DNA of 63,559 nt, filler included, from Octopus bimaculoides (lineage: Eukaryota), in NCBI RefSeq assembly GCF_001194135.2. It is 5 parts of 5 records of this genome, joined end to end, with 100 filler letters (N's around TTAATTAATTAA, not from the genome) between each part and the next. Parts side by side here need not be neighbours in the genome. Positions count along the whole stretch, not along the records: positions 34,647 to 63,559 come from NC_068992.1; 4 more parts are not named here. The stretch is one strand, 5' to 3'. Shown here in pieces: positions 34,712 through 62,365 of this stretch. The translations under genes and the position numbers were made by a program. Under the pieces are notes generated by a model. It was given only the letters and a program-made list of their open reading frames with translations, did no database searches and was not told the origin of the DNA. The stretch's first letter is position 1, and each line of letters starts with the position of its first letter.

Positions 34712-35788
34712 AGATACACTCATGTGATATGTATAAACATATACACAAACGTTTCGTGATAAGTTTTACTCTTTATAAACTTCGCAACTTTGCGTCCATG
34801 TTGTTATATGGTAAGTCAAAGGCATATATATATATGTGTGCGTATGTATGCATGTATATACGTATATAATTATGTACATGTGTTTATTAATATAAGTAAT
34901 TATGTAAATTTTCCTGTATATTTATCATTGCATCCCCATTGTTTGTCATTGATTTAAGTTTAGATATTCAGTTTCATGCTCCACCAGTAGAACTTTCAAC
35001 TTTACTTGGCTTATCTCTGTCTCTCGTCTATCTATCTCAGCTCGAATTCATTGATTTATAGACCGAACGTGAAAGAATGAAAATAAAATACCTACAACCA
35101 AATGGAACGTAAACACTCTTTAATTCATATCTTTCCAACATCATGTGCAATGCCAGCAAAATCGAAATCTTTAAATACACACGGAGACATACACACGGAT
35201 ACATACACATACACACGCACACACACACACACGCACACACGCACGTACCCACGTACGCACCCACACACGCACACAAACATACACGCATATATATGCATAT
35301 CAATACATTCAATATGCACAATATATATATATANNNNNNNNNNNNNNNNNNNNNNNNNNNNNNNNNNNNNNNNNNNNNNNNNNNNNNNNNNNNNNNNNNN
35401 NNNNNNNNNNNNNNNNNNNNNNNNNNNNNNNNNNNNNNNNNNNNNNNNNNNNNNNNNNNNNNNNNNNNNNNNNNNNNNNNNNNNNNNNNNNNNNNNNNNN
35501 NNNNNNNNNNNNNNNNNNNNNNNNNNNNNNNNNNNNNNNNNNNNNNNNNNNNNNNNNNNNNNNNNNNNNNNNNNNNNNNNNNNNNNNNNNNNNNNNNNNN
35601 NNNNNNNNNNNNNNNNNNNNNNNNNNNNNNNNNNNNNNNNNNNNNNNNNNNNNNNNNNNNNNNNNNNNNNNNNNNNNNNNNNNNNNNNNNNNNNNNNNNN
35701 NNNNNNNNNNNNNNNNNNNNNNNNNNNNNNNNNNNNNNNNNNNNNNNNNNNNNNNNNNNNNNNNNNNNNNNNNNNNNNNNNNNNNNNN

Positions 35789-41399: not shown

Positions 41400-44300
41400 G
41401 GAAAATAAAAGCTGAAGAAAAGAAAGAAATATTAAACGTACGATAAATCTTTATAGGCCCATGGATGCTAAAATTGTAAAACATTATGGCTTACTTTAAT
41501 AGTTTTTCCGAAATAAAAAATGATATATACAATTTTATCGATTGTTTATCAAGTTATTTAGGATTTTCTTTCGATAACGAAAATTCGATTAAGTGTGTGT
41601 GACTATTTTTGTGCTTTTTATTGAGAGGAAGCTTTTAATTGCATTGATCTTTGTAGTATTGTGTATTTGAGTAATGTTCGTCTCTATAAAATAACTAGCC
41701 TTCAAAATAATGAATGAACCACGACAGTTTGACAGAAACTCCTATCCACATGAGATGCGCTCTTGTTTAGTTATTTGTATGTCGTTATTAGAGATGTTAG
41801 ATAATAAACTTAAATAAAGAAAGGAAATCAATGTATTCTATTCACCTCTCGTCTACAAATTCCTCCTGTTTACAAGACATATAATGAACTTCAAATCCAA
41901 CTTAAACATTGAAATAAAATTGTGCTTTATACAGAAAAAAGATGTGCTTCATAGAAGAAAAAAATAAGGTGATGTATTTAAGCAATCCCAGTGTCATTAT
42001 TATCATACTATATTTTCCTAATAAGATTTATGTGAACTGGTCAACAGGTCTATAATTTAATGATGTCCAAAGAAGTATTTACTCCATTGAACTGGAAAGC
42101 TTAACTCAATGCTTCCAAAATTGTCGTTTTCTTTCGATTCTGTAGTTCTGAAAACACACTCTAATGCACACACACATCCATAAATCCATTCATATAAACA
42201 TTGATACAGACAAGCATGCATACATGTATACTATTTTGAAACAACATCGTTTCTATATGTCTTTAAGGGGTCCTCACTCTCAGAAATTGTAATAGAAACT
42301 ACTTATAATGTTTCTTGAAGAAAATCATTCGAATAAGATATAGTTTATAATATTCAACTTTGATATAGAATGTGACATCCTAATATATTGCACTAGATTG
42401 TAAGTGAGGAATTACCATTTTGGGGACATTATCATACAATACACACGAAACAATAACTTGTTATGTAAAATAAGAACACAAAAACAATGGGAAATATATG
42501 CGGCTGAAATGAGGAGATTATTTTGTTGAACACGTATCTACGACTTCATTTGGGATTAGTTTCCGGTAAAGAAAGCATAAGTAAATCCATCTTGTTAATC
42601 TTTTAAATTGGACAAGTATCAATATAATATGAGAATAAGAACTCTCTATATAGAGTGTATCAAGTACTACAGACAAAGGTTTTATCGCTCAATTTTACAT
42701 TGTTGAAGCTATAAGGAAAGTTAAAAGAAGTGTATGGAAAATGGCGGAATATTTGCAGTACAGATCGTTAACGATCTGACAATATTCGTGACTACGATAA
42801 CAAAGCTGAGATTTCCTTAAGCTTTGCTCATTTGTGCGAACTATATTAATTCTAAATATCACTTGTTTTTAAACAACTGACATTTCTTGATTTAGATTCT
42901 TGATAGACGTAGGTACATCATAAAACATTACTCATTTATTCAACAGGTGAAAATTTTGATTGTGTCTTCAGTGAAAGGTAAAATATATCAACTTGATACT
43001 CTAATATTAATTTTGATAAACGAATTTGATACATGTTAGATACTAGCAGAAACAAGATTTAGGTAGATTACTCGGACTGTGCTTAACATTTGACCACTTC
43101 CTACTTAGATATTGCACATATATTAATTAAAATGTCATTATCAAAATTCAGATTTCGATAAAGAAATTATATATATATGTGGGGGAATAGGTGCGCACCG
43201 CACATGTATCACATTTTCCTATACATCTCCAATTCTCGGTACACACATGTAAAAATACACACATATTCACGCACACACACACATACATATTTATGTATGT
43301 CGTTGTTATAGTTTTATCTCAAGATTTATTGAGAAAGAATCAGTTTCTAACCTAGATCCAAGAGTCAGTCATTGGAATTTCAACATCAACAACATGGTAT
43401 TTTTTTGTATGTATGAATGTAGGTGTGAATGTATGTATGTATGTATGTATGTATGTATCTATCTATCTATCCATATATATNNNNNNNNNNNNNNNNNNNN
43501 NNNNNNNNNNNNNNNNNNNNNNNNNNNNNNNNNNNNNNNNNNNNNNNNNNNNNNNNNNNNNNNNNNNNNNNNNNNNNNNNNNNNNNNNNNNNNNNNNNNN
43601 NNNNNNNNNNNNNNNNNNNNNNNNNNNNNNNNNNNNNNNNNNNNNNNNNNNNNNNNNNNNNNNNNNNNNNNNNNNNNNNNNNNNNNNNNNNNNNNNNNNN
43701 NNNNNNNNNNNNNNNNNNNNNNNNNNNNNNNNNNNNNNNNNNNNNNNNNNNNNNNNNNNNNNNNNNNNNNNNNNNNNNNNNNNNNNNNNNNNNNNNNNNN
43801 NNNNNNNNNNNNNNNNNNNNNNNNNNNNNNNNNNNNNNNNNNNNNNNNNNNNNNNNNNNNNNNNNNNNNNNNNNNNNNNNNNNNNNNNNNNNNNNNNNNN
43901 NNNNNNNNNNNNNNNNNNNNNNNNNNNNNNNNNNNNNNNNNNNNNNNNNNNNNNNNNNNNNNNNNNNNNNNNNNNNNNNNNNNNNNNNNNNNNNNNNNNN
44001 NNNNNNNNNNNNNNNNNNNNNNNNNNNNNNNNNNNNNNNNNNNNNNNNNNNNNNNNNNNNNNNNNNNNNNNNNNNNNNNNNNNNNNNNNNNNNNNNNNNN
44101 NNNNNNNNNNNNNNNNNNNNNNNNNNNNNNNNNNNNNNNNNNNNNNNNNNNNNNNNNNNNNNNNNNNNNNNNNNNNNNNNNNNNNNNNNNNNNNNNNNNN
44201 NNNNNNNNNNNNNNNNNNNNNNNNNNNNNNNNNNNNNNNNNNNNNNNNNNNNNNNNNNNNNNNNNNNNNNNNNNNNNNNNNNNNNNNNNNNNNNNNNNNN

Positions 44301-44477
44301 NNNNNNNNNNNNNNNNNNNNNNNNNNNNNNNNNNNNNNNNNNNNNNNNNNNNNNNNNNNNNNNNNNNNNNNNNNNNNNNNNNNNNNNNNNNNNNNNNNNN
44401 NNNNNNNNNNNNNNNNNNNNNNNNNNNNNNNNNNNNNNNNNNNNNNNNNNNNNNNNNNNNNNNNNNNNNNNNNNNNN

Positions 44478-45800: not shown

Positions 45801-48388
45801 TGCGTTTGAAGCAACTTTTCACAGATCTTAAAATTGTTTTTTTTTCGCAATTATTATGAATGTAAGCGAAACAGAAATCAAATCCGTAATACAAACATAA
45901 AAAGACGCATCTCAAATTATAGCAATTACGTAAAATAAGATGAGTATGTAAGTGGTAGCAAGACGCCAGTTAACTGACCCAACAAGGCAGGTTCGATATC
46001 TGGCTGTAGTATCTGTCATTCTTTACATTCCAAAGAGGTATGTACCGCATGAATTACCTGCCGAAGTTCTCACATGAGGTGGTCACTTAACTAATGTATA
46101 ATTGTAAGTTTCTTCATTCTGTATTTGACCAAAAAACTTTGGAGCCTGCAAGAATCCATGTTCTTGTTGGCACATAGCAGTGGCAACGTTTTGGTATCCC
46201 TTACAATGATTTATATAATTTAGGGGGCGTTATTACTATTATAACATTTAAGTCATTCGTATCTGCAAATCTGTTTCTGTTCTGGCTATTATTATACATT
46301 ACTGGTACGAAATTCTACATTGCTATCATGCCATGGCCATTAAAGATATTTAATTGCATGTTTCAATGAGTGATGGCAAATGTTTTATGTAAATAAAACA
46401 ATTTTGCTTTGTGACAGAAAAGAAATCGCAACCTGATCTGCATTTCGTATAATCCTTATACGAAATGCAGTCAATCACGAGACAGTGGATCCTGAATGAT
46501 ATTTTTGTTTACGCTAAACATATAAAATACTACATTTTCAAGTAATAATGAAAACAGGAATAGCATTGTTTAACAACTTTAGTGGCATTAGCAGCTTAAT
46601 TAAAAGAAGATTGCTCCGCTGCTTTAAGACACCTCTTAGATAAATCGGTTTACCATACGTTAAATTCTTATTACTGCTTCGTGCTTAATTCAGTAATGCC
46701 TTTCGTGTTAATTAATATATAAGTAGCGTCAGAGGATTCAGGTAAATGTTGCTGAGAGATGGGGTATGTCTGAGAATCATACTCATTGACTTTAACGTAA
46801 TCGTGACACATCATAAATCATTATGCATATATAGGGATTAACGAGCATTAATATGCTAAGAAATGACGTGCGATGAATAACTGCCATATTTTCCTTAAGT
46901 CGTACATTGCTGTCTTGTTTTTTGAAATACAGTTGAAAATATTCTAGGAAGCATGTATCTGAGTAAAAGGGATATCACCCACAGAACTGTATTTGCTAAT
47001 AGATATTTTCGTTCCATTTTGACATTACGGGAAATATCCCCAGATAAGATATACTCGGTTACTAGAATAACTGATGTACTAAACCTAATAACTAAAATTA
47101 ACATTGCACAATTATCCATGGAGAAGAACATCATTAACTTAATAAATCTGGTAAAAGTGTGTGTGTGTATGTGCGTGGAGGTAAGATACCATGAAACGTT
47201 TAACAATAGAAATCAAACGATACATGAAATATAGTGAGTGTTTACCTTCATATTTAATACATGATAACACTGGTACTGTATTGAGGTTCTTAGTTTGCAT
47301 GAGTGAAATATAGGTCAACCCTTGCAGAACATACAATAGTGGGGGATAAACGGTTTTTTGTTTGTTTGTTTGGTATATGAGAATTGGATGTTTTAGTCAC
47401 TTTTCAAAAACATATAGGTATAATACACGGTTAAGTTAAAATATAAAACTTGAATAGTAGAGTAGGTCAGTGACACACATTTAACGCAGAATCTCAATCA
47501 GCGAGCTACAAATAATAGACACAATTCTCCTATACCTCACGATGTTGTCCTAAATATATATATATATATTGGATAACCTCATCCTGGAAATAATAAGCGA
47601 TAAAATATAATGGTATAGGCACGACTGTAACGCTGATTGAATTGTCGCATTCGAATTCCTTACAAGTACGCTTTTTGACCGTGCGTGTAAGGAATCCGAA
47701 AGCAGCGATTCTGCACGAAGCAGACGCAAAAATATTTAGAAATATGAGAACAAAATATTCACTCAAATACCAACGAAGAACGGCAAGCAGTAGTACCTGA
47801 CATAAACAAACACAAATTCAATTCCGCTATCTAAAAGTCATTTGAACCATGTAATGCAAGACGCAGCTACATCTGACAGACAATTGAATTAAACTATTTC
47901 TCAAACATTACTTTCGAAAATATACATTATGTATGTATGTATGTGTGTATGTATGTATATATGCCTCTATGTATGTATATTTATATANNNNNNNNNNNNN
48001 NNNNNNNNNNNNNNNNNNNNNNNNNNNNNNNNNNNNNNNNNNNNNNNNNNNNNNNNNNNNNNNNNNNNNNNNNNNNNNNNNNNNNNNNNNNNNNNNNNNN
48101 NNNNNNNNNNNNNNNNNNNNNNNNNNNNNNNNNNNNNNNNNNNNNNNNNNNNNNNNNNNNNNNNNNNNNNNNNNNNNNNNNNNNNNNNNNNNNNNNNNNN
48201 NNNNNNNNNNNNNNNNNNNNNNNNNNNNNNNNNNNNNNNNNNNNNNNNNNNNNNNNNNNNNNNNNNNNNNNNNNNNNNNNNNNNNNNNNNNNNNNNNNNN
48301 NNNNNNNNNNNNNNNNNNNNNNNNNNNNNNNNNNNNNNNNNNNNNNNNNNNNNNNNNNNNNNNNNNNNNNNNNNNNNNNNNNNNNNNN

Positions 48389-48441
<53 letters not shown>

Positions 48442-49481
48442 TACATATATACAAATATATATGCATGAGTATATATATCTGTGTATATATATATATGATA
48501 TATATATGTATATATATAATATAGATACACATATATGTATACATATATATATATATATATATATATATGCATAAATATATCTATGTATACACATATACTA
48601 GGATATATATAAGTAAATATATATACACACATGCATATGGAAGAATACTTTATATATATCTAAGGATCGCAGAAGTCTGAATGTAAACATCGTGAGCATT
48701 TTCAATTCAATAAAATATTTCCCAAAGTTTGTAATTAGCGAAAGTCATGTAAATTGGTAATTTCCAAAACTTTACTTGTGTAGCGTTTCAGTCAGGAACT
48801 TAGAAGAACTGCATCTTATAGAAACTATTAATACCGAAGACGGCAACCATAGAAATCAAATAATACGCGTGCTGCTAACGAGTGCAATATAATGGAAATT
48901 TACCTGCTACTAAATTCATTAATTATAGAAATCTTACAGTAAACTGTTGTCTGTATAGTCAGTATATTATCTAAATCAAATGTATTTGCCTCAAACACCC
49001 AATATTACACACACACGCCCATAGATACATGATTACTCTTACACAAAACGTGCATGTTCTATATACTGTTTGTTATACGTTTGACTAACACGTAACTCGG
49101 CGAGCTGGTACAATCTTTAGCTAGTTGGACAAAATGCTTCGCGGTATTTCTTCCTGTTTTTACGTTTTGAGTTCAAATTTCGTAGGAGGCGACTTTGCTG
49201 TTCATGCTTTGAAAGTTAATAAAATAAATACTAGGTAGGCACTGTAACTGGTGTATTTGTGCTAGCCTTCTGCTAAAACTGGAAACTGTATATATCACGC
49301 ACACTCATATACATACGTATGCATATATGCGTGAGTGAGTGTGTGTGAAATCACGCGCGCGCCTGTATGCATGTGTGCGTGCACACACGCCTAAATTTCA
49401 GTGATTGAAATCATATGAGTATAACTTGAATGCAGTAAGTATACCTTCAAATTTGGAAACAATGTCATTGAAAGGTATCTG

Positions 49482-49516
<35 letters not shown>

Positions 49517-50271
49517 NNNNNNNNNNNNNNNNNNNNNNNNNNNNNNNNNNNNNNNNNNNNNNNNNNNNNNNNNNNNNNNNNNNNNNNNNNNNNNNNNNNN
49601 NNNNNNNNNNNNNNNNNNNNNNNNNNNNNNNNNNNNNNNNNNNNNNNNNNNNNNNNNNNNNNNNNNNNNNNNNNNNNNNNNNNNNNNNNNNNNNNNNNNN
49701 NNNNNNNNNNNNNNNNNNNNNNNNNNNNNNNNNNNNNNNNNNNNNNNNNNNNNNNNNNNNNNNNNNNNNNNNNNNNNNNNNNNNNNNNNNTATATATATC
49801 TATATATATATATATATATATATATGAAACAGGAAAACTTCAATGTTACTTCAAATTTACCCCCAGAAAACATTTCGGACTTCAATACTTTACTCTTGAC
49901 ATATACAGCAGAAATGACTGTATTCCACTCTACAACACAGACATTTTTGAAGGAACACTCAAACTATCTGCGTATAACGAGGCAAAAAAAAATCAGAATG
50001 AATTCATAACTTCCTTCACTAACAGTTTAATTATAAGTACAACACTGAATTTCAGACACAAATTAACATTCTAAGACCTGACGTAATTATATTATCATGC
50101 ATTACGTAACGCCAAATAATTATCTAGCTGTTACAATATCGATTTCTGATTGATGAAACGCTTCATCGAATACTCTATGATAATGTTAACATATCTAAGT
50201 ATATTTAACATGTAAGGGAATATTCTAAATTACTGCCTTTGTATGTTTAAAATTCTTTTCACTAACAATTC

Positions 50272-50749
50272 CACCGCCGCTGCTGGGCACTTTTCCTCAG
50301 CCTTAAGGACGCAGTAATTGTGTCAAGGCCGACAGGAAGCGGTCCAACTTCCTAGGGCTAAACAGCAGTAGTGTATTCCCTTATTGGGATTGTCACATTA
50401 AGTTGACAATATACTACAACGTTGTCGCTCCACTACTGCTCAAATCTCTCTGAGAGATTTAGAAATATTATATTTCTAATTTTGCTGATCAGTGAATGAA
50501 CTTCACTATGATTTACATAAGTTTGTGAAGGAGAAACAGGCCTTTCTATTCGGCTGCTAGGCTGCTTCAGGCCGATGACGAGCAAAGACTCAGAAACATG
50601 TCCCTGAATGCTGACTAGGGTGGGTGGGGGAGCTTGTCTCCCCTTCACAAACTTAAGGACACAGGAAGCGGTCCAGCTTCCTAGGGCTAAACAGCAGTAG
50701 TGTATTCCCTTATTGGGATTGTCACATTAAGTTGACAATATACTACAAC
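50272..50749 (+). mobile_element. Hammerhead-containing, direct-repeat-bounded structured element (retrozyme/PLE pLTR-like)
   Basis: 89-bp direct repeats at 50332-50420 and 50661-50749 (1 mismatch), many internal hairpins, hammerhead at 50566-50608. Confidence 0.7.
50566..50608 (+). ncRNA. Minimal type I hammerhead ribozyme motif
   Basis: UUCAGG-CCGAUGA-C-GAG-CAAAGA-CUC-A-GAAA-CAUG-UC-CCUGAA: 6-bp stem I, 3-bp stem II, palindromic ACAUGU helix III, GUC cleavage triplet (cut after 50602); U4->C variant. Confidence 0.7.
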
Positions 50750-51482
50750 TTTATAAATATATATATATATGTGTGTGTGTGTGTATGATTGTATGATAGA
50801 TCGAATGTGTGTGCGTGTGTGACAGAGCGAAATTTATCATATGTTGCTGAATATTTTGTAATTAGAGTTAACCATCAATGTGAAAACGGTTTATAGACCA
50901 CCAAATACATACAGAAAACTGCAAGCATGCACACACATCGACTACCACTTATATAGAGAAATGTTGACATGTGAATATCAGTGTAATTCAATTTCAGGAG
51001 AACATACAGCTAGTGGGCATGATTTCGGTCTCTGATTTAGTAAACTCCATAAATCTGTGGATGAAGCATAAGAATCTAATGGAGTCGAGAGATAAGCAGT
51101 AGAATAGCAAAAAGAACTTCGCCCAGATTGAATATCGATATATGGTGAATTCATTTGAATTAAAAGTTCGATACTCAATACAATTAAAACATGATGAATT
51201 GCCGAAAGGTATCACGGCCGAATTTTATTGAAGAGAGCGATAAAGATGACGTCTGTGTTTCGAATATATTATTGTATGTTAATGATAAATTCTCGTCTCC
51301 AAAATTTAAACGAAATTTGTAAAATATTTAGCAACTCATTTCCCCGTCTATACTTCAATTCCTCCCAGTGTATAAGTATAGTTTCGATATAAGACTCTTA
51401 AATTATTTATAAGTGAGTTTAATTCTGTGAGAAGTTAAATATTTATTAGAGGAAGAGTCAGCAGTAATACGGAGCGGGAATG

Positions 51483-51799
51483 TTTATCCCTACTTAGATG
51501 TAGATGTTCTGTTAGAACAAACAATACTCCGGTAGATACAAAAAGAAAATCTCATGTTAGCTTTCGGTGAAAACCACGCTCTTGTTGATATTGTTAGCCG
51601 GGAGACAACTCCAATTCCAAAACCACCAGATCACGTAATTTCGTCCTTCCTTAGTCTTCTCCATGATGTACGCTTCACCTCGTAATGCAGAACAGCGGTA
51701 GCAGGACAAGCGCTGATATCGCCAATATGAGTTTCTCTCCGGGTATCTACCGTAGTATAGTTTGTTCTAACAGAACATCGATGTTTAAGTGGGCATAAA
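51483..51799. mobile_element. Degenerate MITE with ~80-bp TIRs
   Basis: GATGTTCTGTTAGAACAAAC (left arm) / GTTTGTTCTAACAGAACATC (right arm), with imperfect extensions. Confidence 0.7.
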
Positions 51800-52296: not shown

Positions 52297-52524
52297 AGAG
52301 AGCAANNNNNNNNNNNNNNNNNNNNNNNNNNNNNNNNNNNNNNNNNNNNNNGAGAGAGGAGAGAGAGAGACAGAAAGTATTAAGGAGAATTTTAAAATTG
52401 ATAGAAAATAGAGAAATAGGAGATGACAAGTTAGTACCTAGAGGTTTCAGAGGTAGGCAGTAAAGCAAACAGCAAGTTAACTATAGTAAGAGATGAATAA
52501 GATTGAGAGGAGAAGATAGAGAAG

Positions 52525-53199: not shown

Positions 53200-54245
53200 A
53201 TTGCCTAATTTCTTTATGCCATAGAATACCATCGATGAGCTGCATGAATATGGATTTTGAAGACAACCAATTTTTCAAGCCACTGTTTAATCCGCATACT
53301 TTATGACAGAGTATGCATTCGAAAGTATCTGTCTATCTATACAATGTGCAATTGTGCAACCTGTGATTTCATATGACTCTTTAGCTCAGCCATACTAAGA
53401 CAAATCTTTCCACATTCATCACATGTAAGATCATCACGCTAATCAATGCTTGTTAGAAAATCATTCCTGTAACTTTTTCTCACCTTCTTTTGATGTTTAC
53501 ATGCTCCATTCTCTTCCTTTCAAATTCCTGTTTGCCTTCATACACAACTTTTTTCCATTTTTCTCATCAATGCGCTATATCTTCCCAGTTGTCAATTGGA
53601 ACATTTATTCTGCCCAATCCTGACTTCAGACAATCTTTGTACTCCATCTTTGGTTTGTGGGACGGACGCTTACCTGTTGTCTATAATTCTGACTAAGTGT
53701 CCACTCCGTCTCAGTCTGTACTGCAATAACAAATCTTCAATACTGAAGCATTTCCGTCTTTCAAGCACCTCATCGTCATTCACAAACATTTTCCAGGTGA
53801 TCCTCAAAATCCTTCTGAGACATTGTTGATGAAAACGTTCCATAAGTTTTAAATGCTTACGATACACAGTCCAAGTTTCGCAAGCATATAATAACAGAGG
53901 TTAAGATACACCTTAATCATTGTCGCAGTAAAAATACCTTGTCTATACCATAGTCGGTTTTCCATTTTGCCAAAAGCAAAACTGGCTTTTTGAATGCGTA
54001 GTGACACTTCATCATTAAGATTTGCTGATGTGTTTAGTTTGCTTCCTAAGGAAACAAACTTAGAAACCACAGCAAGTTTTCTTCCATACACGAAGATACC
54101 AGATTCTATGTACGGCATTCCTGGTGCTAGCTGAAACATAACATTAGTTTTGGTTAGATTTATGGTTAAGCCAAATGCCTTGCAAGGCATTGAAATTGCA
54201 TTCATAAGATTTTGCCTGTCCTCCTCAGTATGAGTGACAATATCA
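53200..54245 (-). mobile_element. RTE-clade (BovB-like) LINE, RT C-terminal fragment
   Basis: CKAFGLTINLTKTNVM, EVSLRIQKASFAFG, YACETWTVYRKHLKLMERFHQQCLRRILRITW, LRRSGHLVRI are RTE RT/post-RT consensus motifs; frameshifted. Confidence 0.9.
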
Positions 54246-54954
54246 CTATATTTTATACCCCCTTTCTATGGAAACAACTTGATGCATTGGTGAAAAATCA
54301 ACGGCATTGGAGACCAGGAGGATTAAAGTTGTCACAGAGGAAATCCTGGCTGACATACAGAAATGAAGCAATCTCAATATTGGAAAAGATTTTCCTGTGT
54401 GATGTTGATTCGTCACGGGTACCAAGATACAGATATCATAAACAAGTCCCTCAATCTGTGATATATCAAGCTACTTAGAGAGCAATCTAGATATTGTTTC
54501 ACGTATCCATTTATATTTGTCTGGATTGCAATAAATACGCATCGCTAAACTTTACAACTATTGAACAAAAATATATAGTCATTGAGCAAATAAATTCAGC
54601 TCCAGAAAGGATATGCTTTAAATCAATGGTTAGCGTTACTAAGTGACCATACAATGTCTTGTAAATCAATTACTTGCATTTTGGAGGCGTTTTGCTATTT
54701 TCAAGTATATAACATTTTCTCATTATATGTTATAACGTTTCCCTTTTTGTAAGTGATAATTTGATATCATATGGTTGGTTATGTGTATCAATGTTGTATA
54801 TACGTATCACTCTTAATGATTTTCAACACAAAACTATGCACTTCTCTTTCTATAACGATTGTCGATTAACCACAGCTGGTTTGAGAAGTATATGCTTAGA
54901 TGGTATGATTATATAAATAAATTAATATGCGTACATAAATGTTTGTACTTATGA

Positions 54955-55222: not shown

Positions 55223-55699
55223 NNNNNNNNNNNNNNNNNNNNNNNNNNNNNNNNNNNNNNNNNNNNNNNNNNNNNNNNNNNNNNNNNNNNNNNNNNNNNN
55301 NNNNNNNNNNNNNNNNNNNNNNNNNNNNNNNNNNNNNNNNNNNNNNNNNNNNNNNNNNNNNNNNNNNNNNNNNNNNNNNNNNNNNNNNNNNNNNNNNNNN
55401 NNNNNNNNNNNNNNNNNNNNNNNNNNNNNNNNNNNNNNNNNNNNNNNNNNNNNNNNNNNNNNNNNNNNNNNNNNNNNNNNNNNNNNNNNNNNNNNNNNNN
55501 NNNNNNNNNNNNNNNNNNNNNNNNNNNNNNNNNNNNNNNNNNNNNNNNNNNNNNNNNNNNNNNNNNNNNNNNNNNNNNNNNNNNNNNNNNNNNNNNNNNN
55601 NNNNNNNNNNNNNNNNNNNNNNNNNNNNNNNATATATATATATATATATATATATACACGCACACACATATATATCAGTTTGACATATCATACCTTTGA

Positions 55700-60845: not shown

Positions 60846-62365
60846 AAATATGATAGTTTTCCATTTCCAGACAACCATCGCCAGGAAGATATGACAAAAA
60901 ATTTTCTATCCCAATCGCGAATTAAAAATTTAGTTTTCAATTGCAATGTTCTCTTTAATGACTAATGATTTGAAGTTAATTCAGTGAAAAAATATAAAAT
61001 ATTTCAGCATTGAATATTTTTCGTGTATTGAAAACCATCTAACAATTATTTCGATTAATTTCGTGGATTGTTTTTTCTAGAATCAGCCTTGTGTATTTTA
61101 TACTTCCTTCCTCTCTGCTATACGGTTTTGAATACTTTCTGGAGATATATTTATTAATATAATTACTGGAAATAAGTAGCAGTATACAACTGGGGACCAT
61201 ATAATCGATTTACTCCCATCCTCCAAAATTGCTGGCCTTGAGCGGAAACTTGAAACGAATATCAAAGGTTAAAATCGTAAATATCCTTATAGCAAGAATT
61301 TTCTGGATATTACCAATCGATGCTGGATTACATAATAAGAATTGAGAAGTAGAAAAAAAAAGATATTTTATATAATTCAAAAAGAAAGGTAATTTAGCCT
61401 ATCAGTAAAAGACTATTTTATTGTTGGAAAGGAACAATTATATGCCAATACAGTGCTTTACATTAGAGACGTCATCAATTAATCTAACATTTGAATAGAG
61501 AAGAATTATTGTCAAAGGATGTCTTGTGGAAGTCCAATAATCCATTTATTGCATCAAAGTTCATCTGCAGCATTTAGACATTTTAATTATTTATTTATTC
61601 AGATAATATCGTCTTCATTGACTTTATGACAATAGGAGATAATAATAAGAATATTAATATAATCTTATTTTTACGCACACACATACATACATTCATCTTA
61701 TGAATTTATATATATATATATNNNNNNNNNNNNNNNNNNNNNNNNNNNNNNNNNNNNNNNNNNNNNNNNNNNNNNNNNNNNNNNNNNNNNNNNNNNNNNN
61801 NNNNNNNNNNNNNNNNNNNNNNNNNNNNNNNNNNNNNNNNNNNNNNNNNNNNNNNNNNNNNNNNNNNNNNNNNNNNNNNNNNNNNNNNNNNNNNNNNNNN
61901 NNNNNNNNNNNNNNNNNNNNNNNNNNNNNNNNNNNNNNNNNNNNNNNNNNNNNNNNNNNNNNNNNNNNNNNNNNNNNNNNNNNNNNNNNNNNNNNNNNNN
62001 NNNNNNNNNNNNNNNNNNNNNNNNNNNNNNNNNNNNNNNNNNNNNNNNNNNNNNNNNNNNNNNNNNNNNNNNNNNNNNNNNNNNNNNNNNNNNNNNNNNN
62101 NNNNNNNNNNNNNNNNNNNNNNNNNNNNNNNNNNNNNNNNNNNNNNNNNNNNNNNNNNNNNNNNNNNNNNNNNNNNNNNNNNNNNNNNNNNNNNNNNNNN
62201 NNNNNNNNNNNNNNNNNNNNNNNNNNNNNNNNNNNNNNNNNNNNNNNNNNNNNNNNNNNNNNNNNNNNNNNNNNNNNNNNNNNNNNNNNNNNNNNNNNNN
62301 NNNNNNNNNNNNNNNNNNNNNNNNNNNNNNNNNNNNNNNNNNNNNNNNNNNNNNNATATATATAA

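What the first reader, a model, noticed from the sequence alone, without database searches (positions are those of the whole stretch)
50272..50749. Retrozyme-like element: ~330-350-nt highly structured unit with a hammerhead ribozyme and terminal redundancy
Seen: (i) 89-bp direct repeats 329 nt apart (88/89 identical), each preceded by CTTAAGGAC (350 nt apart), i.e. one monomer plus the start of the next; (ii) a type I hammerhead at 50566-50608, at the tip of a long rod closed by a perfect 13-bp stem (50519-50531/50642-50654); (iii) dense hairpins elsewhere (AGGAAG/CTTCCT, GCAGTAGTG/CACTACTGC, ATTGTCA/TGACAAT, AAATCTCT/AGAGATTT, AGAAATA/TATTTCT, AGTGAA/TTCACT); (iv) no coding capacity. Established: metazoan non-LTR retrozymes are few-hundred-nt tandem units with type I hammerheads that yield circular RNAs, and PLE pLTRs carry minimal hammerheads with a palindromic helix III. 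Inference: a young, non-coding, viroid-like circRNA retroelement family in a cephalopod. I do not know whether it has been described. The U4->C core variant and unpaired C/A at the base of stem II make activity uncertain.
Basis: partly seen in the sequence, partly recalled or inferred. Interest (0 to 1): 0.85.

Follow-up and report, generated by a model that had tools for sequence, protein, structure and literature searches.

The report
Solo retrozyme-like insertion, degenerate hammerhead
A 478-base non-coding insert holds 1.3 head-to-tail copies of a ~330-350-nt highly folded unit with one slightly damaged hammerhead ribozyme motif; it looks like a stranded copy of the known animal 'retrozyme' type of small mobile element, not a new kind of element.

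Summary
The sequence features are all present. There is an 89-92-nt direct repeat 329 nt apart, with CTTAAGGAC 350 nt apart. The unit is strongly self-paired (67% paired, z about -5) and non-coding. It carries one type I hammerhead-like motif at 50566-50608.

The motif has the canonical metazoan architecture. Its unpaired parts are almost identical to a published axolotl retrozyme hammerhead, while its helices differ in sequence but still pair. It has two defects, U4->C and a C/A mismatch at 10.1/11.1. A chance motif this good is expected about 0.005 times per piece, and no Rfam hammerhead model reports it.

Unit size, GC content, folding, lack of ORF, more-than-unit-length insertion, an unrelated 30-nt leader and a (TA)n flank all fit non-LTR retrozymes or Penelope-type integration.

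The locus holds only 1.3 units and one imperfect ribozyme, so it fails the working definition of an active retrozyme. I found no second copy, no PLE ORF nearby, and could not confirm the host. The family, its youth, circular RNA and cephalopod origin remain unverified.

Best reading: a solo, probably inactive offspring copy of a retrozyme-like element. That makes it a new member of a known kind, of modest interest.

The parts
50272..50301 (+). 30-nt GC-rich leader ('tail') at the 5' edge of the insert. It is not part of the repeating unit.
   Evidence: GC jumps from about 28% to 44-52% at this point. Local alignment of the leader to the unit on either strand scores at chance level (15, against a shuffled mean of 15.0). 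PLE-type insertions often carry a 30-40-bp tail at one end (PMC8557442).
50302..50651 (+). Complete unit 1 (350 nt; 329 nt without the 21-nt segment 50311-50331). It is non-coding and strongly self-paired.
   Evidence: MFE -114 kcal/mol, z -4.66; as a circle z -4.9, 67% of bases paired, GC 43.7%.
50311..50331 (+). 21-nt segment GCAGTAATTGTGTCAAGGCCG, present in unit 1 and absent from the partial unit 2.
   Evidence: CTTAAGGAC is spaced 350 nt while the repeat body is spaced 329 nt (D3 and D5).
50652..50749 (+). Partial unit 2 (98 nt). It is the start of a second head-to-tail copy and gives the terminal redundancy.
   Evidence: 50661-50749 matches 50332-50420 at 88 of 89 positions.
50566..50608 (+). 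Type I hammerhead-like motif. Helix I is UUCAGG/CCUGAA (6 bp). The core is CCGAUGA (U4->C). Helix II is CGAG/CUCA with loop CAAAGA (C/A at 10.1/11.1). Then come GAA, the palindromic helix III ACAUGU, and C17. The predicted cleavage site is after C50602.
   Evidence: It is the only hit of my descriptors in the piece, with a chance expectation of 0.005. It is the top hit, end to end, of a covariance model built from four published retrozyme hammerheads (17.5 bits), although a control hit of 17.2 bits appeared in bacterial DNA. Its unpaired parts match axolotl Ax330. No Rfam hit.
50518..50655 (+). Long imperfect rod with the hammerhead at its tip. Its base is the 24-nt arm pair 50518-50541 / 50632-50655, which includes a perfect 13-bp stem. 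The stretch 50543-50552 / 50621-50630 pairs mostly through G-U.
   Evidence: (I24) and the pair list.
50750..50831 (.). Microsatellite block directly abutting the 3' end of the insert: (TA)n, (TG)n, then TGTATGAT twice.
   Evidence: PLEs show an insertion bias for microsatellites such as (TA)n (PMC8557442).

Best explanation
The region 50272-50749 is one retrotransposed insert. It is a solo ('monomer-type') genomic copy of a small non-autonomous element of the non-LTR retrozyme type that carries a hammerhead.

The proposed parent RNA is a non-coding, rod-and-branch folded unit of about 330-350 nt with one canonical animal type I hammerhead. In a tandem or multimeric transcript, two such ribozymes pair through the palindromic helix III (ACAUGU) and cut out unit-length RNA. 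A host ligase then circularises it.

Reverse transcription that ran more than once around such a circle, or along a multimer, produced the 1.3-unit cDNA. The likely enzyme is a Penelope-like RT/endonuclease acting at a microsatellite target. This would explain the terminal redundancy, the unrelated 30-nt tail at the 5' edge and the 3' edge sitting on (TA)n.

At this locus the element is stranded. It has a single ribozyme whose core carries U4->C and a C/A mismatch at the base of helix II, so it should cleave poorly if at all. It cannot release a unit-length RNA on its own.

Shown here: the repeat geometry, the folding, the absence of coding potential, the hammerhead architecture with its statistical rarity, and the absence of a neighbouring PLE ORF.

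Inferred: origin from a circular or multimeric RNA, dependence on a PLE, existence of a family, and loss of activity.
For: (1) Geometry. The repeat is 89-92 nt at 98-99% identity, spaced 329 nt, so the template unit was about 330-350 nt and more than one unit was copied. Neither insert end coincides with the predicted cleavage site 50602/50603, so the template was not a processed linear monomer (inference).

(2) Hammerhead architecture. The motif has exactly the architecture described for canonical metazoan type I HHRs: helix I of 6 bp, helix II of 4 bp, and a very short helix III with a small palindromic loop (PMC4209133).

(3) Comparison with a published ribozyme. Axolotl Ax330 reads AGGCUGC-ACCUCA-CUGAGGA-GGUC-CAAAAA-GGCC-GAAACAUGUC|UGGGGU-UGCU. 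This motif reads AGGCUGC-UUCAGG-CCGAUGA-CGAG-CAAAGA-CUCA-GAAACAUGUC|CCUGAA-UGCU. Loops, core, helix III and the flanks of helix I agree. Helices I and II have different sequences but still pair.

(4) Rarity. It is the only motif with at most 3 defects in the piece, and 0.005 motifs with at most 2 defects are expected by chance. It is also the top, full-length hit of a covariance model built without it (17.5 bits, nominal E about 0.004). It lies inside the only terminally redundant, compositionally distinct element of the piece.

(5) Unit properties match published retrozymes: 329-350 nt against 170-400 nt; GC 43.7% against <45-50%; 67% paired with z about -5; no ORF with homologues.

(6) Insertion hallmarks of PLE-type integration: a partial tandem, a 30-nt tail at one end, and a microsatellite (TA)n flank.

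(7) Solo monomer copies are a recognised state of retrozyme families.
Against: - No second copy of the unit was found anywhere I could search, so 'family' is unproven. I searched the piece, two metagenome scans, four viral scans, one prokaryote scan, and two protein-space searches with its ORF. None of these collections is expected to hold the host genome, so this is weak evidence.
- The catalytic box CUGANGA is not intact and the 10.1-11.1 pair is a mismatch. Rfam hammerhead models report nothing even at E<=10.
- The covariance model's E-value is optimistic. A 17.2-bit hit turned up in 31 kb of unrelated bacterial DNA.
- My descriptors were written after I had seen the motif.
- No target-site duplication is visible.
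- No PLE sequence was detected in the ORFs scanned between 48.5 and 54.5 kb; the rest of the piece was not scanned.
- The minus strand folds nearly as well as the plus strand, so folding alone does not show selection on an RNA.
Confidence: 0.55

Rival explanations
1. The real locus is a longer tandem array of the 330-350-nt unit, either a retrozyme multimer or a hammerhead satellite like newt satellite 2. The short-read draft assembly has collapsed it to 1.3 units. The locus could then be a transcribed, processing-competent array rather than a dead solo copy.
For: The piece is a gapped draft with seven N runs in 28.9 kb, most of them next to microsatellites. Near-identical tandem units are typically collapsed by assemblers to one unit plus the phase offset. 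The two repeat ends differ by a SNP and a 21-nt indel, as the first and last units of an array could. Published retrozymes range from dimers to arrays of hundreds of units.
Against: There is no gap or N inside or adjacent to the element; the nearest gaps end at 49790 and start at 52306. The contig runs through unique flanks on both sides without a break. Nothing in the sequence itself demands more copies.
Confidence: 0.15
2. This is an ordinary local tandem duplication of a unique, palindrome-rich intergenic sequence, caused by slippage or unequal exchange. The hammerhead-like motif is a chance look-alike, and no retroelement is involved.
For: Only one locus is known. The ribozyme core is imperfect and Rfam is silent. 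A comparably scoring covariance-model hit occurs in random bacterial DNA. There is no TSD. Both strands fold equally well, as expected for DNA-level inverted repeats.
Against: The chance expectation of the motif is about 0.005 per piece, before requiring it to fall inside this 478-nt element. Features not used in the search also match the axolotl ribozyme: loop 2 CAAAGA, the AGGCUGC and UGCU flanks, and GAAACAUGUC. The block is a sharp GC island (44-55% against about 30%) with abrupt edges, as an insert would be. A 30-nt unrelated leader is not explained by duplication.
Confidence: 0.15
3. It is a SINE-like or other LINE-dependent non-autonomous retroposon whose 3' tail is the (TA)n(TG)n(TGTATGAT)2 block, with an internal partial duplication. 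The hammerhead-like motif is either a passenger or chance.
For: The element ends directly on simple repeats, including an 8-nt unit present twice. This is the kind of tail used by CR1/L2-type LINEs (my own knowledge). A CR1-like RT remnant lies 3 kb away.
Against: There is no tRNA-like head, no B box, and no 5S, 7SL or snRNA similarity. Terminal redundancy of a 329-nt unit is not a product of ordinary LINE-type target-primed reverse transcription. The neighbouring LINE remnant is on the other strand and shares no sequence with the element.
Confidence: 0.1
4. It is an endogenised cDNA of an exogenous viroid-like or satellite-like circular RNA replicon with a hammerhead, captured by a host reverse transcriptase. 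It would not be a genome-resident retrozyme family.
For: The size (330-350 nt), the rod/branched fold and the more-than-unit-length cDNA resemble retroviroid-like DNA forms (my own knowledge; PMC7761336 is listed but I did not read it). No other copy was found.
Against: There is a hammerhead in one polarity only, and no ribozyme of any Rfam class on the minus strand. The ribozyme is the animal genomic type I form, not the type III form of plant viroids.
Confidence: 0.03

Closest known systems
Metazoan non-LTR retrozymes (Cervera & de la Pena 2020, NAR, PMC7229834), for example mussel Mg353 and axolotl Ax330/Ax353
   Same: Unit length is 329-350 nt, against 350-390 nt in mussel and 330/353 nt in axolotl. 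GC is low (43.7%). There is no ORF. The predicted RNA is highly self-paired. It has one type I hammerhead per unit with a 6-bp helix I, a 4-bp helix II with a 6-nt loop, and a palindromic helix III. GAAACAUGUC| is identical to Ax330, loop 2 is CAAAGA against CAAAAA, and the AGGCUGC/UGCU flanks of helix I are the same. A base-of-helix-II mismatch also occurs in axolotl HHR_Amex2 (U/U).
   Different: Only 1.3 units and a single ribozyme are present, not a tandem of at least 2. The core reads CCGAUGA instead of CUGANGA. There is no sequence similarity to the published elements outside the ribozyme. The family, expression and circularity are unknown.
Penelope-like element insertions and their pLTR hammerheads (Cervera & de la Pena 2014, PMC4209133; Craig et al. 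2021, PMC8557442)
   Same: Partial head-to-tail tandem, a tail of about 30 nt at one end, an insertion next to a (TA)n microsatellite, and a hammerhead with palindromic 15.2-16.2 / loop 3.
   Different: There is no RT/GIY-YIG ORF between or beside the repeats. The repeats are 329 nt apart rather than kilobases. The ribozyme has the 'canonical' 6-bp/4-bp form, not the minimal PLE form with a long helix II.
Solo/monomer retrozyme derivatives (Li, Clavereau & Pollet 2026 preprint, doi 10.64898/2026.07.22.740005)
   Same: These are full-length single units dispersed in the genome and regarded as offspring that cannot transpose further.
   Different: That category is defined by homology to a family consensus taken from active arrays in the same genome. 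No such consensus is available here.
[quoted passage not shown] 2011, PMC3088659)
   Same: A hammerhead-like motif with a core mutation and a mispair next to the core. Such motifs were rejected by strict filters in genome surveys.
   Different: Here the repeat context is only a single 1.3-unit copy.

Membership tests
Hammerhead ribozyme, type I (canonical metazoan form) | Conserved catalytic boxes C3-U4-G5-A6-N7-G8-A9, G12-A13-A14, A15.1-U16.1, H17 | tested here: not met
   Ten of the 11 fixed core positions and H17 are met. Position 4 is C (CCGAUGA). U4C is a known natural viroid variant with reduced activity in vitro. All single mutants of the CUGA turn had low activity in a mutational scan.
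Hammerhead ribozyme, type I (canonical metazoan form) | Three helices around the core, with helix I open; helix I about 6 bp, helix II about 4 bp, and a short palindromic helix III | tested here: met
   Helix I is 6 bp and perfect. Helix II has 3 bp plus C/A. Helix III is ACAUGU. The architecture follows PMC4209133.
Hammerhead ribozyme, type I (canonical metazoan form) | Base pair at 10.1-11.1 (usually G-C) adjacent to the core | tested here: not met
   The pair is C50579 / A50592. There are natural precedents for a U/U mismatch here.
Hammerhead ribozyme, type I (canonical metazoan form) | Match to curated Rfam hammerhead covariance models | tested here: not met
   No hammerhead family is reported at gathering score, nor at E<=10 in a 601-nt search.
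Hammerhead ribozyme, type I (canonical metazoan form) | Match to a covariance model of published retrozyme hammerheads, built without this sequence | tested here: inconclusive
   It is the top hit in the piece, end to end, at 17.5 bits with nominal E 0.004. However, a 17.2-bit hit occurs in 31 kb of bacterial control DNA.
Hammerhead ribozyme, type I (canonical metazoan form) | Self-cleavage after position 17 | not testable with these tools
   This needs in vitro transcription of monomer and dimer constructs.
Non-LTR retrozyme | Tandem repeat with at least two consecutive units, each carrying a complete HHR | tested here: not met
   There are 1.3 units and one HHR-like motif. Assembly collapse cannot be excluded.
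Non-LTR retrozyme | Unit of about 170-400 nt, low GC (<45-50%), and no coding capacity | tested here: met
   The unit is 329-350 nt with GC 43.2-43.7%. There are no homologues or domains for its ORFs.
Non-LTR retrozyme | Unit RNA predicted to be highly self-paired | tested here: met
   67-68% of bases are paired, with z -4.9 to -5.5 as a circle.
Non-LTR retrozyme | Multi-copy family in the genome, co-resident with autonomous PLEs | not testable with these tools
   No host genome is available. There is no other copy in 28.9 kb and none in the searchable collections. No PLE domain was found in the ORFs scanned, 48.5-54.5 kb.
Non-LTR retrozyme | Expressed as linear and circular unit-length RNA | not testable with these tools
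   No transcriptome data are available.
PLE pseudo-LTR | Direct repeats flank an RT + GIY-YIG ORF | tested here: not met
   The repeats are 329 nt apart. There are no RVT or GIY-YIG hits in ORFs from 48.5 to 53.4 kb. The only RT trace is a CR1-like remnant at 53673-54265 on the other strand.
tRNA-derived SINE | tRNA-like head with A/B boxes | tested here: not met
   ARAGORN finds nothing. There is no B box in the element and no Rfam small-RNA hit.
Viroid-like RNA of the Avsunviroidae type | Hammerheads in both polarities | tested here: not met
   No minus-strand hammerhead lies within 50272-50749.

The most novel reading that the evidence does not exclude
Its master copies would really use the C4 core with a C/A(+) closing pair, making it a naturally selected non-canonical hammerhead that still processes multimeric transcripts into circular RNAs of about 330-350 nt.
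Probability: 0.07. Interest if true: 0.6.

Novelty: new member of a known kind. Interest (0 to 1): 0.33.

Why it matters
If a family stands behind this copy, it would add another animal lineage to the hosts of hammerhead retrozymes. It would also give a dated example of more-than-unit-length integration, because the two repeat ends differ by only 1 SNP and one indel. That is useful for the open question of how circular or multimeric retrozyme RNAs are copied into DNA by Penelope-type enzymes.

The near-identity of the unpaired ribozyme parts to an amphibian retrozyme, with fully different helices, illustrates how conserved the canonical animal type I hammerhead is.

As it stands, the locus is a single, probably inactive copy of a known kind of element, so its value is mainly as a lead for a genome-wide search.

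Tried and rejected
(1) Rfam. No family reached gathering score over the piece, and no hammerhead was reported at E<=10 around the element. The seven weak hits (snoRNA, miRNA, CRISPR-DR) are low-complexity noise.

(2) Finding other copies through protein space. The 71-aa and 97-aa minus-strand ORFs gave no homologue in the 5.8-billion word-indexed search. In the 1.84-billion phmmer search they gave only two tandem-repeat proteins of unrelated sequence, P0010 and P0011.

(3) DNA pattern scans. Two metagenome scans and four viral scans returned 0 hits. The prokaryote scan gave 4 hits, all in bacterial genomes, about the number expected by chance by my own rough estimate. None has a hammerhead at the matched site.

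(4) Host identification through the neighbouring LINE RT remnant. The best named hits are turtle and trematode RTs at 38-54% identity, which is not diagnostic.

(5) Homology of the whole unit to the published coral, mussel and axolotl retrozymes. Similarity is restricted to the ribozyme.

(6) The 30-nt leader as a diverged end of a preceding unit. Rejected, because the alignment score is at chance level.

(7) A target-site duplication. None was found.

(8) Strand asymmetry of G-U pairs as evidence for an RNA-level fold. Totals are similar on both strands (11-12 against 13-14), so this is not informative.

(9) A second hammerhead-like motif at 51623-51669 (-). It scores 9.1 bits with E 1.4 and is not within 3 defects in my descriptor, so I treat it as chance.

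Full report
OBSERVATION

- A 92-nt direct repeat (50332-50423 and 50661-50752) is 98% identical with a spacing of 329 nt.
- CTTAAGGAC precedes both copies at 50302 and 50652, spaced 350 nt (D5). The 21-nt difference is a segment (50311-50331) present only in the first copy.
- The block therefore consists of a 30-nt leader (50272-50301), one complete unit of 350 nt (329 nt without the extra segment) and 98 nt of a second unit. It ends at 50749 directly on a (TA)n(TG)n(TGTATGAT)2 block.
- The block is a compositional island, at 44-55% GC against about 28-33% in the flanks.
- The unit folds far better than shuffled versions. The linear form gives -114 kcal/mol (z -4.66). As a circle, z is -4.9 to -5.5 with 67-68% of bases paired.
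- The minus strand folds almost as well. Folding by itself therefore does not show selection on an RNA.
- Coding capacity is nil. The longest ORF (97 aa stop-to-stop, minus strand) has no Pfam domain and no real homologue in two very large protein searches.

THE HAMMERHEAD

The motif at 50566-50608 reads:

UUCAGG | CCGAUGA | CGAG-CAAAGA-CUCA | GAA | ACAUGU | C / CCUGAA

This is an open 6-bp helix I, the first catalytic box with C instead of U at position 4, a 4-position helix II whose closing pair 10.1/11.1 is C/A, the GAA box, a palindromic helix III, C17, and the 3' strand of helix I.

This is the architecture described in the literature for canonical metazoan type I hammerheads: helix I of 6 bp, helix II of 4 bp, and helix III of 1-2 bp with a small palindromic loop, so that the ribozyme works as a dimer (PMC4209133).

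Evidence that it is more than chance:

1. A descriptor allowing one core mismatch and a mispair at the base of helix II finds only this site in the piece. It is expected 0.03-0.06 times per 25.7 kb of sequence with the same dinucleotide make-up.
2. A second descriptor fixes the literature architecture and counts defects of any kind. It gives this site 2 defects and finds no other site with 3 or fewer. It expects 0.005 sites with at most 2 defects and 0.04 with at most 3.
3. I built a covariance model from four published retrozyme hammerheads: coral Amil224, mussel Mg353, and axolotl Ax353 and Ax330 (sequences from Supplementary Table 2 of PMC7229834; alignment, model).
4. Features that none of these searches required also agree with axolotl Ax330. 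Loop 2 is CAAAGA against CAAAAA. GAAACAUGUC| is identical. The sequences just outside helix I are the same (AGGCUGC on the 5' side, UGCU on the 3' side). Helices I and II have different sequences but still pair.

Evidence against:

- Rfam reports no hammerhead family at gathering score, or even at E<=10 in a 601-nt search.
- The same covariance model gave a 17.2-bit hit in 31 kb of unrelated bacterial DNA, so its E-values are optimistic.
- My descriptors were written after I had seen the motif.

On balance I take the motif to be a real derivative of the animal type I hammerhead rather than a chance look-alike.

Whether it still cleaves is doubtful.

- All single mutants of the CUGA turn had low activity in a comprehensive mutational scan (PMC9901934).
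- U4C is, however, a known natural viroid variant. It is much weaker in vitro but sufficient in vivo. A U/U mismatch at 10.1-11.1 occurs in natural active hammerheads, including axolotl HHR_Amex2 (PMC3088659; PMC7229834).
- The combination of both defects is untested. In addition, helix III of this type needs a second ribozyme copy to form, and this locus has only one.

WHAT THE ELEMENT IS

The 329-nt spacing of the repeats shows that the copied unit was itself only about 330-350 nt long. The terminal redundancy shows that more than one unit length was copied. Neither end of the insert coincides with the predicted cleavage site 50602/50603, so the template was not a processed linear monomer. 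It was a multimer or a circle (inference).

The following match published metazoan non-LTR retrozymes (PMC7229834):
- unit size: 350-390 nt in mussel, 330/353 nt in axolotl;
- GC content of 43.7%;
- dense self-pairing;
- absence of coding capacity;
- one canonical type I hammerhead per unit.

The way the insert sits in the genome matches what is described for Penelope-like elements, the presumed mobilisers of animal retrozymes (PMC8557442; Li et al. 2026 preprint):
- a partial head-to-tail tandem;
- an unrelated tail of about 30 nt at one end;
- a 3' end abutting a (TA)n microsatellite.

It is not itself a PLE pseudo-LTR. No RT or GIY-YIG signal is detectable in any ORF of 40 aa or more between 48.5 and 53.4 kb. 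The only RT trace is a frameshifted CR1-like LINE remnant at 53673-54265 on the other strand.

It is not a tRNA-derived SINE. It has no ribozyme on the minus strand.

Outside the ribozyme it shares no sequence with the coral, mussel or axolotl retrozymes. If there is a family, it is a distinct one.

LIMITS

[quoted passage not shown] It corresponds at best to the 'monomer' or solo derivatives described as non-transposing offspring.

I could not find a second copy anywhere:
- none in the 28.9-kb piece;
- none in two metagenome scans and four viral scans;
- only chance hits in the prokaryote scan;
- no ORF relatives.

None of these resources is expected to contain the host genome, so the existence of a family is untested rather than refuted.

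The host could not be identified.

The piece is a gapped short-read-style draft with seven N runs. The true locus could therefore be a longer array collapsed to 1.3 units. No gap touches the element, though.

VERDICT

The most likely explanation, at about 0.55, is a solo and probably catalytically impaired genomic copy of a retrozyme-like, PLE-type-integrated non-coding element. It would derive from more-than-unit-length reverse transcription of a circular or multimeric RNA.

Rivals:
- a collapsed real tandem array (0.15);
- a plain local duplication with a chance motif (0.15);
- a LINE-dependent SINE-like element (0.10);
- an endogenised exogenous viroid-like RNA (0.03).

It is a new member of a known kind and of modest interest. 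The decisive step is a search of the source genome and transcriptome for further copies, their consensus ribozyme, and circular junction reads.

Noticed in passing
window 51483-51799 (arms 51483-51561 / 51721-51799): A second strongly folding element about 1 kb downstream. It has 79-nt inverted arms (80% complementary) around a 159-nt centre, with MFE -119 kcal/mol and z -6.7 on the minus strand. Its centre holds a weak hammerhead-like string at 51623-51669 (-): U3..A8, G at position 4, GAAAU, and a palindromic ACGU. The score is only 9.1 bits (E 1.4) and the string is not within 3 defects in my descriptor, so it is probably chance. The element could be a foldback or MITE-like element, or an inverted PLE-type insertion remnant.
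   Followed up: partly
window 53673-54265 (-): A frameshifted remnant of a non-LTR (CR1-like) reverse transcriptase with an '...LLYACETW...' motif. Pfam RVT_1 matches only weakly (E 0.16). The best protein hits are at 38-66% identity, including turtle and trematode RT-domain proteins. It is unrelated in sequence to the finding.
   Followed up: partly
window 35334-35788, 43481-44477, 47988-48388, 49517-49790, 52306-52351, 55223-55631, 61722-62355: Seven N runs lie within the 28.9-kb piece, most of them flanked by (TA)n, (TATG)n-like or (CT)n microsatellites. The long 'perfect inverted repeats' reported around 49466-49845 are just (TA)n on both sides of an N run. This indicates a short-read scaffolded draft in which tandem repeats may be collapsed.
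   Followed up: no
window 50543-50552 / 50619-50631: Within the rod, a U-rich stretch (UUUCUAUUCG) pairs with the G-rich tract GGGUGGGUGGGGG mostly through G-U pairs. That segment can pair only in plus-strand RNA. This could hint at the functional strand, or it could be an artefact of energy minimisation.
   Followed up: partly
L001 193-234 (Dehalococcoidales MAG contig JAGMCH010000034.1): The covariance model built from four animal retrozyme hammerheads gives 17.2 bits to a bacterial sequence (UCCUCA-CCGAUGA-GGCA..UGCU-G..AUGGGGA) that lacks the GAAA box and helix III. This is a reminder that a 4-sequence model rewards similarity to the axolotl helix I, and that its E-values are too optimistic.
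   Followed up: no
window 50782-50797: An 8-nt unit, TGTATGAT, is repeated twice just after the (TA)n(TG)n block at the 3' edge of the insert. This is the kind of short tandem tail seen at the 3' ends of CR1/L2-type LINEs and their SINEs. It is relevant to the SINE-like rival explanation.
   Followed up: no
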